DNA from: Selaginella moellendorffii
Taxonomy: Eukaryota; Plantae; Lycopodiophyta
Length of the DNA stretch: 64,000 bases
Direction: 5' to 3'
Assembly (NCBI RefSeq): GCF_000143415.4
Contig: NW_003314296.1
Location: 186,001-250,000, forward strand
A model generated the notes under the pieces. The model saw only the letters and a list, made by a program, of their open reading frames with translations, searched no databases and was not told where the DNA came from. The number at the start of each line of letters is the position of its first letter. Position 1 is the first letter of the stretch. Made by a program: the position numbers and the translations under genes. Shown here piece after piece: positions 5,132 to 10,911 of the stretch.

Positions 5132-6752
5132 GGCGCACAGAGGTTCTTCGTTTCCTGCGATCTCATCTTTCTTCTAGAGTAGTATCGTAGTGGCGGCGCG
5201 GCATTGCTACTGCTGGAGAAGCCACAAAGCTCTTTTTGCTCCGACACGTATCGGTTTTGGACAGTTTCTTGAGATGCTGCTCTGGGTGTGAAGGTGGGAA
5301 TTCGGTGCTCGTCGCGGACAGGGAGAGGGAGAGGGAGAGGGAGAGAGTGAGAAGTTAATTGCGGCTGTCGCGCAGGCAGCCACCTCTCTTCCTTTTGGAG
5401 CTGCTGCTCATCAATGGCACCGAATTTCCCCAAAGCAAGCTCCTTTCTTCCTGGCTAACTTTTCCTTTTGCTTTGTTTCTCTCTTTTCTTGGCAGAGCCG
5501 CATTACAGAGTTCTAGGCAACGTGAATGCTGTCTGATCCAGGTACTCTGACAATGTTCTTCTCCTTGACATGATTCTTCCACTGTTTTGTCAGATCCCAG
5601 AGCGTGATCCCAGCTGATCAAAATATGTTCTTCGACTGGTCCAAAGCCAGAGCAACTTGGTTCTTTCAGGTACTGTGAATCGATTCACTTAGACGCAGGT
5701 GTCTACCTAGAGCAGAGAGTTCCTTTGCTTTGGTCTATAGGTGCGTTTGTTCCTTTCCATTTGTTCCTTGTGCGCTTGTCAGTATAGACTACCAGCTAGT
5801 AACCATCCATCCAGTGCCTCTGCTGATAGAAAAAGGAAGAAATTTTTGTCTATCCTCTCCTTTTCCAGTGATAGTGTCGGGACAATGAGAGTGTGAAGGG
5901 AATGTGTCTTTAGCTGTTTTATTCGTTGTCTGTTGGAATCCACATGTGACAAACCATGGGCGATAGAAAATCTATTTCCTTGATATTTGGCTAACAAACT
6001 CTCATTGTTACTCGCAGGCCTGGCCAGCCATATCCATGGATTAAGCTTTGGAGATCGAGATGGAGCCAGGGAAGAAAATATCGAGAAGGGCCGTGTCCTT
6101 GCTAAAGGTTCCAATCTAAACCACGCTCCGGGAAGATCCAGGTACTAAACGTGGGTATCTTATCTTATATTCTCTCGCAGAGGTTCTTTCTTGTTAGCGG
6201 CACGGAGCCAAAAGTTTCTCTCCGTCCGTACGCCAAGGACACGCCTATTGAAGGCAACCACATGGGCTATAAAAATACGATAGGTACTACCATTGATGGA
6301 GATGATCTCGTCGTGTAGAAGCGCTTCTTCTCTTCTCTTCTCTCCGAGCATCTTGTATTTATGAATGGAACGCGAATATGCGTTTCCACCATTTAAAACT
6401 TGCCTGACCGTGCGTGGGTTCCCATGAGGAAATCTTTTTCAAAATAGAAATAGAATTTTAGAAATAATGGATCATATCATAATCATGTGAAATTTCACAC
6501 AACATTAGCATTAACGGGGATTATAGGACGGGCGAGATGCGGATTTTCGTGAAGGTTGGGGTAATGGTTGACAAGTGGAATTTCAAACATGGGATGGGAG
6601 AGGCATCACAAGATCATCAAAACGGCTTACTATAATCCGTCAGTCTCATGCTTCTTGGTGGGCGCCACAAAACCCAGCTAATGAATGAATGAATGAAATG
6701 CAAACACCTTTCCACTTTAGAGATTCATGAAACTTATCTTCCAGCTTTCCAA

Positions 6753-7747
6753 TCAAGCTAAGCCATTGGTGAAATCAAATATCTCTTGGCCTGCTAAGAA
6801 TGGTACTTGGTGCTTTTCAGCCCAGAATCTGGCATCCTGAAGTGGAAGGGCTCCAAAGTCATCACCCTCATTACACAGCATCACACAGCCAACCTAGAAG
6901 GATCAGTTAGCATCTACAAATTACAGGAATATCAATCAGAGGAAAAAGAATCATACAAAGCTAACAGAATTAAAACGGTCAAAGGAAAAAGGAAAAAGGA
7001 AAGAAAAAGAGAAAAGCTTGAGAGAAAACATGCAAGTTAGCATCTTAATATCATAGAAAGCACAGGAATATCAATCAGAGCAAAAAGAATCATACAAAGC
7101 TAACAGATGATTACAACAGTCAGGAAAAATAATAGAGAGAAAAAGCCTACCATGAGAGGAGAGATCCCTGCTGCTTTGGCAAGGGCCACTGATAGCTCAG
7201 TGTGGCCCTGCCTAGCTCTCAAGCCCAAAGAGTTCTCCACACACAGAAAAATATGGCCTGGAGCATGAAATTCTCTCCCAAATGCCTCTTGGGCACTTGT
7301 AAGAGGCTTGACAATACCACCATTGCCATTGGAGGCACAGCTGTGCTCGCCCCACAGGCCAGCCAGGCGGCGACACGTGTAGCTCCTCTCCACGTCGGAC
7401 GCCCCAGTCTTGAGGCTCCTGTGGTCCAAAGAGATTCCAACCGAGCATGAGCCCTGGCACATTACCGTACCTTTGGCACTGCACTGCAGCACGGGGTGGG
7501 AATGGGCCATGGCCAGCACCTGACCCATGTACGGCAGCCCGAACGTCGTGGCCACCTCGCTGCCAATGGCGATGTAGAGCTCGCCCCCGGCCTGCGTACG
7601 GAGAGTACGGAGCGCGCCCGGGGTGGTGGTGGCCGCCGGGAAGAACAAGTCGGTCTCGCCCTCGCGGCTCTCCGAGTCGAGAATGGCGACGCATTTGCCA
7701 CTGGCCAGAGCTTCCAGTGCCTGGCGGATGATCGAGGACGGTGGCAT
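6753..7747 (-). CDS. ribB: Stand-alone DHBP synthase (RibB) homolog, archaeal-like, 245 aa, 2 exons (7747-7151, 6893-6753)
   Basis: DSESREGETD, TGASDVER, EFHAPGH and RQGHTELSVALA motifs. Phase-0 GT-AG intron at 7150-6894; exon 2 reads VGCVMLCNEGDDFGALPLQDARFWAEKHQVPFLAGQEIFDFTNGLA*. Confidence 0.88.
6923..7125. repeat. ~45-60 bp direct duplication inside the ribB intron
   Basis: acaggaatatcaatcagag(g/c)aaaaagaatcatacaaagctaacaga occurs at ~6923 and ~7062. Confidence 0.8.
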
Positions 7748-8070
7748 TGCTCGCGTGATGCTGGGAGAGAACTTTAAAACCAAAGGAATGGAATCACTTA
7801 CGAACTTCTCGAAGAAACCAATGTAGAAGCTCGAGAAGCTAAAAAACGGGAGAGAAAAAGAGACCTGAGAAAAGGAGCAAGCGTTAGATATTTTGATGAA
7901 ACCACGAAACGATTATAAAGGGGAAGAGAGCCATACCTTGTTTGTCTTTGTCTCGCAGGCGCTGGTTGAAACAAGACAAAGAATTATCTGCAAGCGCACG
8001 AATCTTAAGGCCCAGAGCGCTCGAGCTGCTGCGAGTGGTCTTTCGCTGACACCGATAATAATGGAGTGTA

Positions 8071-10911
8071 TCATAAGTAGTCGTCGGCCTCGGAGAAATA
8101 TGGTTGGAACATTTCCTCCTCCCAACAGTGGTCTGCTATAACTTTGTAAACTTCCATGAGGAGCTTCGGAAATCTAGTCCGGAAGTAGCTCTCGTAGCCT
8201 TGAGGAATGCTTCCTAGTATTTGCTGCAAAGAAACCAAAAAGAACTCAGCAATTCGGTAGAAGAAGAGAAGTAAACCTTGGGAGAAAAGAGTTACCTGTA
8301 CATCGGCAGGAAGCTCCCTGTAATGGTTCGCCTTGTTACGAATGACCCTGAGTAAATCCCGCACGGCCTGATAGTTATATTGCCTGTAGCGGCCGAGGTT
8401 GTTGATGAGTAAAGGGTCCAGCTTCTCATCCCATGCTCCGCCCAACGCAGTCGGAGCCACGGCCTCCAGCGCAGTCAGTACCGCCGAGCTGGCTTCTCTA
8501 TCCTCGCGTTCGACACGATCGCTAGCAGTGATGAGAAACTGCAAGCGCTGTTGCGGGGGCCAGAAAAATGGATGAAGCTTTACTTGCATAGCAGTTGGTC
8601 TGTGTAAAACAGAAAAGGATTGATCAGAAATATATCCAAAGATTGTACCTGTCTTTGGGATCCATGGCAAGCAAACTTGAAATGATGTCGATAGCTTCTG
8701 GATAGTGATCTACAGCAAAGAGATCCATTTTACCAGACACAATGTTCATGTCACGCTCCAGTCGGCCTCCAAATGGATGCTGTCCGCCAGTGACGCAGAA
8801 GTAAAGGAGGCAACCAACGCTGAACATATCTACAGCTCGAGTTTGCCGCTCGCCCTGGATTTGTTCGGGTGCTTGCCAGCCGGAACTGCCCATACCTGTT
8901 TAAACATACGTAAAATCTTTCTCTTTCTTTTGTTTTTGGCAAATAGAATCGTACCAGTCGTAAGCTTGTCAATGCCTGACGCTCCATCATTCAGCCGCTT
9001 ACTGATTCCCATATCGGATATTTTTGCGCTCAGAAAAGTGCCACTCCGAAGAATCAAGACGTTTTGAGGCTTCAAGTCTCGATGAACATAGCCGAGCTTG
9101 TGAAGATGAACGAGTCCTTCCAAAACATCTCTGTAATGAAAAGCGAACAAGAAAATAGTACGTGAGCCAGCAACAAGAAAACTACCTCATCAGTCTCATG
9201 AGCAACGGGCTTGGAAGGCAGGACCTATCCCACAAGGTGAGCTTTTGCTGCAAAATCTCCTGGAGTTCTTTCTCCTCGAACTCGTTTACTTCAGTTCGAT
9301 TGTCTGCGCCAGCAGCGTGCACGACAATAAATGTTTCCAGGTTAAAGCTGCATCTCTCCAGAGCTATATAGACGAAGTCGTTGTCCTGCTCCATTGAGTA
9401 GTACCGCACCACATTTGGATGAGTATCCAGCTCGATGAGAGCAGCTATTTCCTTCGAGGCTTTGTGGTAAAAGCCGCTAAGTATCGACTTCACAGCTACC
9501 TGCCTCTGATCCAGCTTGCCTTCGAGAATCCTGGTGCCATGACTTCCGTAACCGATGACTATCTTAGAGATCGTCAAGCTCCCAATTCTTCCATCTGCAT
9601 CCTGCTTTTTCGGTTGATCCACTTTCGTATCATCCACCTGTTTACTAACGTTTTCTTGAGAGGCTCGATCACCCTTCGGACCTCTGCGTTTCTTCCGCTT
9701 TTGCTGCTGCTCCTTTTCCTTCTTCTGCTTTTCTTTCTGTCCAAAGTGTAGCACTCCTTTCAGCACCAGAGTTACCACAGCCAGACATGCAAGCAGTGCA
9801 CCGAAAAGCCACCCAACTGGAAAGCTTCCCCTGCCGCTGTTGGTGCTGTTTCTGGGATTGGATCCGCTAGGAAGTGCCAGAATCGCATTTGAAGGAGCCG
9901 AGACTGGAGGCAAGGTGTGGTTCTTGACAAGGTAGTCGAGGTAATACGGTGGCTCCACGATAATCGGTGTGAATTTCGTGCCTTGAAACGTGCGCTTGGA
10001 TGGCTTTCCATCAGAGACAAGCACAGTCAAGCTGGTTGTATTTCCTGCTGCGATACCTGGATAGTCGATATCCTCCGCCAAGTTGGCAACTTCCGAGAAT
10101 CGTATCGTCCACTTGACGGAGCCGGTTGAGACTTCGAAGCACGTCAAGGAATAATCTGTGCGTTGGAAGAAGAGGGGCTTAAAGTCCTTGAGCATCGAGG
10201 ATAGCAGCGGCTCCGCATCCTTCCCAGACGTTGTTCCGTTGATGTCAAACTTGTGGATCAGAGTCCCGGTGCTGGGGTCGACCACGAACACTGATTTCAA
10301 AGACGCCCCTATCACCACGCCACCCTCGCTCACGATCGGGCTCTCAGCAATGTACTTCTTCAAAGTCTCGTAATCCTGTGAAGAATAAAAAGTGTGAGCT
10401 CCAGAACCACAAATAAGTAAAAAAACAAGGCTTGGCTATGTAAATTCTACAAGAGCTCGACAGTGCTGGGAGGAAACTCTTCTATCAAGACTTGAAAGGA
10501 AAAACTAGAAAGGATTGCAAAAGAATTCACGTCCCTAAAAACGCGTAGCGGCTAAGAACCCAAGATACCTGGTCGAAATGCTCCGCCTCGTCGGCATACT
10601 GCTCAATCGGCTCAATCTCCACGAGCGAGCTCCCTCCAGACGAAAACGACCAGAAATACTTGCCAGTGTCATCGATCGCGTGCACAGTACCATCTGGCGT
10701 GAGCCTGAAACCTCTACAGTGCGAAAGTACATCGATTAGGCAGCGGCCACGACCTTCGATCGCTCACTTACAGTGAAGAATCCGAAAATTTGGGCGCCTG
10801 TGCAAGCGTTAGATCCGCCGCGACTGGATTTCCCGAAATTTCACCCGCGGATGGCCGTGTCGATTTGCCGCTGAGCCCTAGCGGCACGAGAAGGAGCAGC
10901 AATGCCAGCAT
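8071..10911 (-). CDS. IRE1: IRE1 ER-stress kinase/endoribonuclease, 7 exons (10911-10772, 10713-10569, 10375-9186, 9130-8955, 8895-8649, 8599-8296, 8223-8071)
   Basis: Signal peptide, luminal domain, TM helix, kinase motifs (GYGSHGT, VAVK, HPNVVRYY, HRDLKPQN, DMG, GWQAPE) and KEN RNase motifs (DLLRVIRNKANHYREL, YFRTRFPKLL). All splice phases are consistent. Confidence 0.95.

What the first reader, a model, noticed from the sequence alone, without database searches (positions are those of the whole stretch)
6753..7747. Stand-alone, archaeal-looking RibB with a spliceosomal intron in a plant gene cluster
Plants normally encode DHBP synthase fused to GTP cyclohydrolase II (RibBA) with a plastid transit peptide. 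This 245-aa gene has neither the fusion nor an evident transit peptide. Its signatures (DSESREGETD, R.QAGG, G(L/I)P(Y/F)M..L insertion, FG(R/K)EF..PGH, RQGHTE, AEKH...L.G.EI) recall archaeal RibB of the Methanocaldococcus type as I remember it, rather than the bacterial/fungal DDEDRENEGD type. The intron and the position 323 bp from IRE1 show genuine integration. Inference: horizontal acquisition from an archaeal-type donor.
Basis: partly seen in the sequence, partly recalled or inferred. Interest (0 to 1): 0.74.

Follow-up and report, generated by a model that had tools for sequence, protein, structure and literature searches.

The report
Archaeal-type RibB-like gene in Selaginella
This is a real, expressed Selaginella gene for a stand-alone enzyme of the riboflavin-pathway DHBP-synthase fold; green algae and seedless plants inherited it from marine archaea long ago, which was published in 2012, but in the whole green family the key catalytic glutamate sits at a different position, which has apparently not been described.

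Summary
A two-exon, minus-strand gene (7747..7151, 6893..6753) encodes a 245-aa stand-alone DHBP-synthase-fold protein. It is identical to RefSeq XP_024538363.1 of Selaginella moellendorffii and lies 323 bp downstream of IRE1. Its intron is spliced in RNA contigs of four runs.

The archaeal affinity is real. The best solved structure is Methanocaldococcus RibB. In trees the protein falls inside Thermoplasmatota and is sister to Marine Group II (Poseidoniales) RibB (100/97).

The transfer is neither lycophyte-specific nor new.
- Orthologues occur in chlorophytes, streptophyte algae, mosses and a liverwort.
- Cyanophora has an unmodified relative.
- No fern or seed-plant copy was found.
- Yue et al. 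2012 already listed the moss orthologue as the one archaeal transfer into plants.

I found one thing that is not in the searchable literature. Every green-type member carries Val where all other DHBP synthases sampled have the catalytic Glu (Glu185 in M. jannaschii). Every one also carries Glu where the others have Leu, and Cys where the others have Tyr95. Metal and phosphate ligands are kept. The enzyme is therefore either rewired or has a new function.

The scan met this gene before on other DNA. The other haplotype carries a broken allele (s1-423033), and its two deletions also appear in the RNA contigs here.

The parts
7151..7747 (-). Coding exon 1 (residues 1-199): acidic loop DSESREGETD (R28, E29, E31, D33), GGELY (E56, Y58), MCQGSC (C97, C101), PGH (H165), RQGHTE (R179, H182, T183)
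   Evidence: Translation. Pfam DHBP_synthase. Covered by RNA contigs.
6894..7150 (-). Spliceosomal intron, 257 nt, GT..AG, phase 0. It contains an internal 54-nt duplication (6915-6968 and 7054-7107).
   Evidence: The sequence is. A joint 6891->7149 skipping 257 nt appears in contigs of all four runs.
6753..6893 (-). Coding exon 2 (residues 200-245 plus stop). It begins VGCVML; V203 (6884..6882) stands where other DHBP synthases have the catalytic Glu.
   Evidence: 100% identical to P0202 residues 200-245. Column census.
6403..6752 (-). 3' untranslated region, approximate. RNA contigs end between 6403 and 6515.
   Evidence: table 8: X5 6403-6894, X7 6408-6894, X1 6515-6894.
7748..7864 (-). 5' leader directly upstream of the ATG. 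It is CT-rich and open in the frame of the ATG (39 codons).
   Evidence: Covered by contigs.
7865..7936 (-). 72-nt GT..AG intron between the IRE1 stop codon and the RibB ATG. It may be a 5'-UTR intron of RibB or a 3'-UTR intron of IRE1.
   Evidence: A joint 7862->7935 (cut +2) appears in all four runs. The GT at 7936-7935 and AG at 7866-7865 were read.
7937..8074 (-). Upstream exon piece on the same RNA contigs. It is open in the RibB frame back to an ATG at 8074..8072, which overlaps the IRE1 stop (ATGA). It could add 46+39 residues; this is not shown to be translated.
8071..8223 (-). Context: the last coding exon of IRE1 (stop at 8073..8071). The same RNA contigs run from here into RibB exon 1.
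   Evidence: Ribonuc_2-5A at 1.3e-43.

Best explanation
This is an intact, transcribed nuclear gene of Selaginella moellendorffii. It belongs to a green-lineage subfamily of archaeal-type DHBP synthase (RibB).

Origin. The family entered an early archaeplastid or green-lineage ancestor from a Thermoplasmatota archaeon close to Marine Group II (Poseidoniales). It was then inherited vertically through chlorophytes, streptophyte algae, bryophytes and lycophytes. It was apparently lost in ferns and seed plants.

Change after transfer. On the stem of the green family the protein changed fast (about 1.1-1.4 substitutions per site). It kept the fold, both metal ligands and the phosphate-binding residues. 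It moved or lost its general base: Glu185 (M. jannaschii numbering) became Val, Leu53 became Glu, and Tyr95 became Cys.

Inferred mechanism. The protein still binds Mg2+ and ribulose 5-phosphate (or a close sugar phosphate) as a dimer and starts enediol chemistry. It does so with a differently placed base. In streptophytes it works outside the plastid riboflavin pathway, which RibBA serves.

Shown here: the gene model, splicing, phylogeny, phyletic pattern, residue pattern and fold. Inferred: substrate, chemistry and location.
For: Gene and expression.

Fold: the AF2 model has pLDDT 95.2. Foldseek's top hits are 1pvy/1pvw with TM 0.88-0.95 and rmsd 1.8 A.

Phylogeny:
- Archaeal type versus bacterial type, including E. 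coli RibB: 100/100.
- Named Thermoplasmatota plus the green clade: 100/99.
- Green type plus (Cyanophora + MGII): 100/97.
- Streptophyte subclade with Selaginella: 97/87.
- Green stem length: 1.09.
- The best prokaryotic matches are all Poseidoniales, at 39-42% identity.

Distribution.

Residues:
- At the Glu185 column, 109 of the 117 non-green rows have E (12/12 MGII, 84/92 other archaeal-type, 13/13 bacterial) and 22/22 green rows have V.
- At the Tyr95 column, green rows have C.
- E56 and V203 co-occur in every green-type row, including the divergent dinoflagellate subfamily, and in no other row.
- D24, R28, E29, E31, D33, H165, R179, H182 and T183 are kept. They correspond to the ligand-binding residues reported for Zymoseptoria DHBPS in PMC12268802.

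Intactness: the window's allele departs from only 2 of 92 green-conserved columns.

Other DHBPS sources: S. moellendorffii also has two RIBA genes (PMC3509567).
Against: - The role of Glu185 as the indispensable base is from my memory of Steinbacher et al. 2003. That paper is not held here.
- I could not measure whether E56 lies next to V203, because no model coordinates are available. The reciprocal swap may simply relocate the base and leave an ordinary DHBP synthase.
- An AU test did not reject a tree with all archaeal rows together, excluding the green clade (dlnL 25.5, p 0.064).
- The green stem is long, so attraction artefacts are possible.
- Absence from ferns and seed plants rests on database searches, not on genome scans.
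- The cytosolic location is inferred only from the lack of an N-terminal extension. An in-frame upstream exon exists in Selaginella.
Confidence: 0.6

Rival explanations
1. The protein is an ordinary DHBP synthase with a hopped base. The Glu at position 56 reaches the same spot as the lost Glu185, and the protein still makes DHBP for riboflavin as a second isozyme.
For: The swap is strictly reciprocal: Glu and a hydrophobic residue exchange between two columns in all green-type rows. Position 56 is two residues before the column of M. jannaschii Cys55, which lines the active site. All metal and phosphate ligands are kept. Chlorophyte members carry long Ala/Arg/Ser-rich N-terminal extensions that look like organelle-targeting peptides.
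Against: Streptophyte members lack any presequence, while the plant riboflavin pathway, including the RIBA proteins, is plastidial (PMC3509567). The lid loop is also rebuilt: Tyr95 to Cys, Asp to Gln, Ser to Cys, Phe to Val. The proteins score below both NCBIfam equivalog cut-offs. The long stem suggests more than neutral compensation.
Confidence: 0.35
2. The gene was acquired recently and specifically by lycophytes from an archaeon. This is the simplest reading of the first reader's note.
For: There is archaeal-type sequence in a plant genome, and no homologue in Arabidopsis.
Against: Orthologues at 52-63% identity occur across green algae and bryophytes. Selaginella groups within streptophytes (97/87). 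The nearest archaeal protein is only about 41% identical.
Confidence: 0.02
3. There was no transfer. The gene is an ancient eukaryotic gene of archaeal ancestry, retained only in Archaeplastida. Alternatively, Marine Group II archaea took it from an early alga.
For: The AU test does not reject placing the green clade outside all archaeal rows (p 0.064). The two deepest branches around the MGII clade are eukaryotic, the green type and Cyanophora. Green plus Cyanophora as one clade is not rejected (p 0.38).
Against: The green+MGII clade nests inside other Thermoplasmatota with 100/99 and 95-100 support. No other eukaryotic supergroup has the gene in the searches. The exceptions are a dinoflagellate with a green plastid and a rotifer assembly.
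Confidence: 0.1
4. The protein is a catalytically dead pseudoenzyme or regulator that only binds sugar phosphate.
For: The otherwise near-invariant Glu is lost. One Selaginella allele is broken yet tolerated. The gene has been lost in many lineages.
Against: Both metal ligands, H165, D33 and the acidic loop are invariant over roughly a billion years of green-lineage divergence, and new invariant residues (E56, C101, Q98) arose in the active-site region. This pattern fits catalysis better than mere binding.
Confidence: 0.08

Closest known systems
[quoted passage not shown]
   Same: Same fold (TM 0.88-0.95, rmsd 1.8 A) and about 33% identity. It is stand-alone and about 230 aa long. It shares the acidic loop, the PGH and GHTE motifs, and the archaeal-type loop between helix and strand.
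   Different: Glu185 is Val, Tyr95 is Cys, Cys55 is Tyr and Leu53 is Glu. There is a 3-residue insertion before the last helix and a longer variable loop. The gene is eukaryotic, has an intron and is nuclear.
RibB of Marine Group II archaea (Candidatus Poseidoniales, Thermoplasmatota)
   Same: These are the nearest prokaryotic relatives (39-42% identity) and the sister clade (100/97). They share the 'GL' before RxGHTE, part of the DGD insertion, and a short C-terminus without the W..W tail of other Thermoplasmatota.
   Different: MGII proteins keep Glu185, Tyr95 and Leu53.
Physcomitrella 'ribB' listed as an archaeal transfer by Yue et al. 2012 (PMC3493653)
   Same: It is the orthologue: P0004, 61% identical, in the same clade with the same residue signature. 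It has the same inferred origin.
   Different: The moss gene has no intron. The paper names Euryarchaeotes in general and treats the protein as riboflavin biosynthesis.
Plant bifunctional RibBA (RIBA1-3)
   Same: Its N-terminal half has the same Pfam domain and the same reaction is expected.
   Different: RibBA is of the bacterial type, is fused to GTP cyclohydrolase II and is imported into plastids (PMC3509567). The window's protein is of the archaeal type, is unfused, and has no presequence at the annotated start. No plant RibBA sequence was in my trees; bacterial-type representatives and E. coli RibB stood in for it.

Membership tests
DHBP synthase (Pfam PF00926) | Domain match above the gathering score | tested here: met
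   138.7 bits against a cut-off of 26.4, covering profile positions 2-190 of 191.
DHBP synthase (Pfam PF00926) | The fold of solved DHBP synthases | tested here: met
   AF2 pLDDT 95.2. The top 47 Foldseek hits are all DHBP synthases.
DHBP synthase (functional enzyme) | Metal ligands Glu (M. jannaschii E26) and His (H164), and the phosphate-binding Arg, Arg and Thr | tested here: met
   E29, H182, R28, R179 and T183 are invariant. Their roles are as in PMC9305975 and PMC12268802.
DHBP synthase (functional enzyme) | The conserved Glu after the last core strand (M. jannaschii E185, E. coli E174), recalled as the base that starts enediol formation | tested here: not met
   It is Val in all green-type rows and Glu in 109 of 117 other rows; the rest are gaps or fragments. 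Every PDB sequence whose printed alignment reaches this column (M. jannaschii and three bacterial enzymes) has Cys-Glu there.
DHBP synthase (functional enzyme) | Conversion of ribulose 5-phosphate to DHBP and formate | not testable with these tools
   This needs an enzyme assay or complementation.
NCBIfam RibB equivalogs (TIGR00506; archaeal PRK05773) | Score above the curated equivalog cut-off | tested here: not met
   142.3 against 177.45, and 117.6 against 262.
Archaeal-type RibB lineage | Groups with archaeal rather than bacterial or fungal sequences | tested here: met
   The split has 100/100 support. PDB E-values are 2e-34 for the archaeal enzyme against 1e-13 or weaker for the others.
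Plant RibBA | Fusion to GTP cyclohydrolase II | tested here: not met
   Only the DHBP_synthase domain is found. The stop codon is at 6755..6753 and is followed by a 3' UTR.
Plant RibBA | Plastid transit peptide | tested here: inconclusive
   There is none at the annotated ATG, since the alignment to M. jannaschii starts at residue 7. An open in-frame upstream exon of 46+39 codons exists on spliced contigs; its translation is unknown.
Green-plant gene family of archaeal origin (Yue et al. 2012 'ribB') | Orthology with the Physcomitrella gene | tested here: met
   61% identity. Both fall in the same 100/100 clade and the same streptophyte subclade.

The most novel reading that the evidence does not exclude
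The green-lineage 'RibB' is not a DHBP synthase any more. After transfer from a Marine Group II-like archaeon, its acid/base machinery was rebuilt: Glu185 to Val, Leu53 to Glu, Tyr95 to Cys, plus a second new Cys. It now carries out a different or truncated reaction on ribulose 5-phosphate or a related sugar phosphate, for example stopping at the 1-deoxy-2,3-diketone stage or isomerising. In streptophytes it would do this in the cytosol. That would make it a new enzyme activity that arose by horizontal transfer followed by neofunctionalisation, and was then lost in ferns and seed plants.
Probability: 0.35. Interest if true: 0.7.

Novelty: new variant of a known kind. Interest (0 to 1): 0.45.

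Why it matters

- A sharper donor: Marine Group II/Poseidoniales-like archaea.
- An earlier date: before the chlorophyte/streptophyte split, and possibly shared with glaucophytes.
- A family-wide, strictly coupled exchange of the catalytic glutamate with a neighbouring hydrophobic position.

If the base has merely moved, this is a clean natural case of catalytic-residue migration in an enzyme with a very unusual skeletal rearrangement. If the chemistry has changed, it is an uncharacterised sugar-phosphate enzyme of algae and seedless plants. Either outcome can be tested with a simple assay and with a knock-out of the single-copy, intronless moss gene.

Tried and rejected
- Primary papers on M. 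jannaschii and V. cholerae DHBPS (Steinbacher 2003, Fischer 2002, Islam 2015) are not held. The role of Glu185 therefore rests on memory plus the column census.
- Searches for any functional study of this plant/algal family found nothing relevant. The Dunaliella paper concerns RIBBA1 only.
- Model coordinates are not exposed, so the E56-V203 distance could not be measured. Covariation of the neighbouring columns was uninformative.
- The AU test of 'all archaeal rows one clade' gave p 0.064, which is not a rejection.
- The organisms behind the unnamed Logan contigs could not be learned.
- The bacterial promoter/terminator scan is irrelevant to a plant gene.
- The 235-aa GenBank model P0001, with its 30-nt 'intron' at 7288-7317, is rejected. 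No such joint occurs in four runs, and contigs cross it unbroken.
- Contamination is rejected, given the spliced introns, the IRE1 neighbour and a 1.77-Mb scaffold.
- Decay of the window's allele is rejected.
- IRE1 adjacency is not conserved in Physcomitrium.

Procedure. They were searched by reference, one at a time. The full-length protein was used only as P0202 and P0001, ids returned by the tools.

Full report
**What is there**

The stretch 6753-7747 holds a minus-strand gene of two coding exons: 7747..7151 and 6893..6753. A 257-nt GT..AG intron in phase 0 separates them.

Each was searched by reference. The joined product nevertheless exists in the databases as P0202 = XP_024538363.1, 'uncharacterized protein LOC9657162' of Selaginella moellendorffii. 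It is 245 aa and identical to both exon translations.

An older GenBank model (P0001, 235 aa) removes a further 30 nt (7288-7317) as an 'intron'. RNA contigs cross that place unbroken, so that model is wrong.

**Expression and gene structure**

Contigs of four public runs from four studies lie on the gene and skip exactly the 257-nt intron. They therefore derive from spliced RNA. Their 3' ends fall at about 6403-6515.

Upstream, the same contigs skip a second, 72-nt GT..AG intron (7936..7865). It lies between the IRE1 stop codon (8073..8071) and the RibB ATG (7747). The contigs then run on into the IRE1 exons, including the IRE1 intron 8224-8295.

A contig across two genes does not prove one transcript. 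Either RibB has a 5'-UTR intron and a start inside the IRE1 3' end, or IRE1 has a 3'-UTR intron and the two transcripts overlap.

The reading frame of the RibB ATG stays open through that splice, back to an ATG at 8074 that overlaps the IRE1 stop. This gives 46 + 39 extra codons. The leader is CT-rich, which disfavours stop codons, and no orthologue has such an extension. I treat translation of it as possible but unshown.

IRE1 is confirmed by Ribonuc_2-5A (1.3e-43) and kinase pieces.

**What the protein is**

Pfam finds only DHBP_synthase (138.7 bits). There is no GTP cyclohydrolase II domain.

An AlphaFold2 model of the Selaginella protein has mean pLDDT 95.2. Its best structural matches are the M. 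jannaschii enzyme (TM 0.88-0.95, rmsd 1.8 A), followed by every other solved DHBP synthase.

By sequence, the M. jannaschii enzyme is far ahead of fungal and bacterial ones.

**Where it comes from**

The word search returned the Selaginella protein and then 52-63% identical proteins from these groups:
- mosses (Physcomitrium, Ceratodon, Sphagnum);
- a liverwort (Calypogeia);
- streptophyte algae (Mesotaenium, Spirogloea, Closterium);
- chlorophytes (Chromochloris, Scenedesmus, Tetraselmis, Prasinocladus, Pseudoscourfieldia, a pedinophyte).

No fern or seed-plant protein appeared, even with a profile of the family.

A scan of one genome per prokaryotic species found that the best matches are all Marine Group II archaea (Poseidoniales) at 39-42% identity. 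Other Thermoplasmatota follow at 31-37%.

In a careful tree with bacterial-type sequences (including E. coli RibB) as outgroup:
- the archaeal/bacterial split has 100/100 support;
- the green clade lies inside a 100/99 clade with all named Thermoplasmatota.

With denser sampling:
- the green type is a 100/100 clade on a stem of 1.09 substitutions per site;
- it is joined to (Cyanophora + Marine Group II) with 100/97 support;
- Selaginella sits in a streptophyte subclade (97/87).

An AU test did not quite reject a tree that keeps all archaeal rows together (p 0.064), so the nesting is strongly favoured but not proven.

Green plus Cyanophora as one clade is not rejected (p 0.38). This leaves room for one acquisition early in Archaeplastida. 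The Rhodelphis copy is nested in crown Marine Group II (99/87) and looks like a separate event.

The transfer is published. Yue et al. 2012 list the Physcomitrella ribB as the single archaeal (euryarchaeote) acquisition, with no Arabidopsis homologue.

**The part that seems new**

I compared 22 green-type rows with 104 archaeal-type and 13 bacterial-type rows.
- The column of M. jannaschii Glu185 (E. coli Glu174) is Glu in 109 of the 117 non-green rows; the rest are gaps or fragments. It is Val in all green rows.
- The column of M. jannaschii Leu53 is hydrophobic in all others and Glu in all green rows.
- The two states never occur apart. This holds even in the divergent subfamily found in a dinoflagellate with a green plastid and in the rotifer-assembly copy.
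- Tyr95 becomes Cys. A neighbouring Ser becomes a second invariant Cys. Asp becomes Gln and Phe becomes Val in the lid loop.
- The metal ligands (E29, H182), H165, D33, the acidic loop and the phosphate-binding R28, R179 and T183 are untouched. These match the ligand contacts described for fungal DHBPS in PMC12268802 and the Glu/His metal ligands in PMC9305975.

From memory, Steinbacher et al. 2003 reported Glu185 as the one second-sphere residue that cannot be replaced, because it contacts the C3 hydrogen and starts enediol formation. I could not re-read that paper here.

The green proteins also fall below NCBI's equivalog cut-offs. This probably explains the RefSeq name 'uncharacterized protein'.

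**How it most likely works**

The protein is under constraint. The window's allele departs from only 2 of 92 family-conserved columns.

I read it as a metal-dependent sugar-phosphate enzyme that still binds ribulose 5-phosphate but deprotonates it from a different position. I cannot decide whether the product is still DHBP (base relocated) or something else (new activity). I put the two at about 35-40% and 35% of the total, with a non-catalytic role near 8-10%.

Streptophyte members have no presequence. Chlorophyte members have long Ala/Arg/Ser-rich N-termini. The plant RIBA proteins are plastidial, and Selaginella has two RIBA genes (PMC3509567). These points lean against a plain riboflavin role in land plants.

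**The other allele**

RNA contigs of three runs replace 7622-7669 (residues 27-42, the acidic loop) with 5 other letters. Contigs of all four runs include a form lacking 7182-7234 (residues 172-189, the RQGHTE motif), alongside unbroken forms. These forms carry about 1% SNPs. Together the two changes remove 96 nt.

The sequenced plant is therefore heterozygous for an intact copy (this window) and a disabled copy, and both are transcribed.

**Verdict**

Interest comes from the coupled active-site exchange and the refined donor and date.

Noticed in passing
window 7865-7936 and 7937-8074 (minus strand): There is a spliced 72-nt intron in the 323-bp 'intergenic' gap. RNA contigs run unbroken from the IRE1 exons into RibB exon 1. 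The RibB frame stays open upstream to an ATG that overlaps the IRE1 stop codon (ATGA), giving a possible 85-residue extension.
   Followed up: partly
window 7622-7669 and 7182-7234: RNA contigs carry a 48-nt stretch replaced by 5 letters (3 of 4 runs) and a 53-nt deletion (4 of 4 runs, alongside intact forms). These remove the acidic loop and the RQGHTE motif and shift the frame. This fits the broken allele of the other haplotype noted earlier in the scan.
   Followed up: partly
window 7288-7317: The GenBank model EFJ21157.1 (P0001, 235 aa) cuts out 30 nt as an intron. RNA contigs do not support this, and RefSeq XP_024538363.1 (245 aa) keeps the 30 nt.
   Followed up: yes
window 6915-6968 and 7054-7107: There is a 54-nt direct duplication (93% identical, 139 nt apart) inside the coding intron.
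   Followed up: no
P0333 (Cyanophora paradoxa, EukProt EP00741) and P0069 (Rhodelphis marinus, EP00736): Two non-green archaeplastids have Marine Group II-like RibB with the canonical Glu, Tyr and Leu, and with N-terminal extensions. Cyanophora is sister to all MGII. Rhodelphis is nested in crown MGII on a long branch.
   Followed up: partly
P0329 (Dinoflagellata sp. TGD), with P0071, P0327, P0328; locus L082: This is a divergent green-type subfamily (RGELY, MVQGKC, GTVM) found in a dinoflagellate that has a green-alga-derived plastid. It carries a 109-residue N-terminal extension and is probably an endosymbiotic gene transfer.
   Followed up: partly
P0324 and cluster (Rotaria sp. Silwood2, contigs up to 32 kb): A green-type copy occurs in a bdelloid rotifer assembly, sister to a metagenomic algal sequence. 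It is either algal contamination or a transfer into the rotifer.
   Followed up: no
P0029 (Sphagnum magellanicum), P0373 (Sphagnum fallax): These are shortened, decayed-looking copies. In P0029, REGETD has become KEAKSN. An intact-looking Sphagnum fallax copy (P0330) also exists.
   Followed up: no
P0014 (Closterium NIES-54), P0045/P0190 (metagenome), versus L086 (Physcomitrium) and L088 (pedinophyte): Two gene models read into extra sequence exactly where Selaginella has its intron (before VGCVM), so that intron position may be shared with some streptophyte algae. The Physcomitrium gene is intronless. The pedinophyte has one intron elsewhere, near residue 125.
   Followed up: partly
P0052, P0380, P0381 and others (Thermoplasmatota, about 407-423 aa): These are archaeal RibB proteins fused to a cytidylyltransferase-like domain (PF01467).
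   Followed up: no
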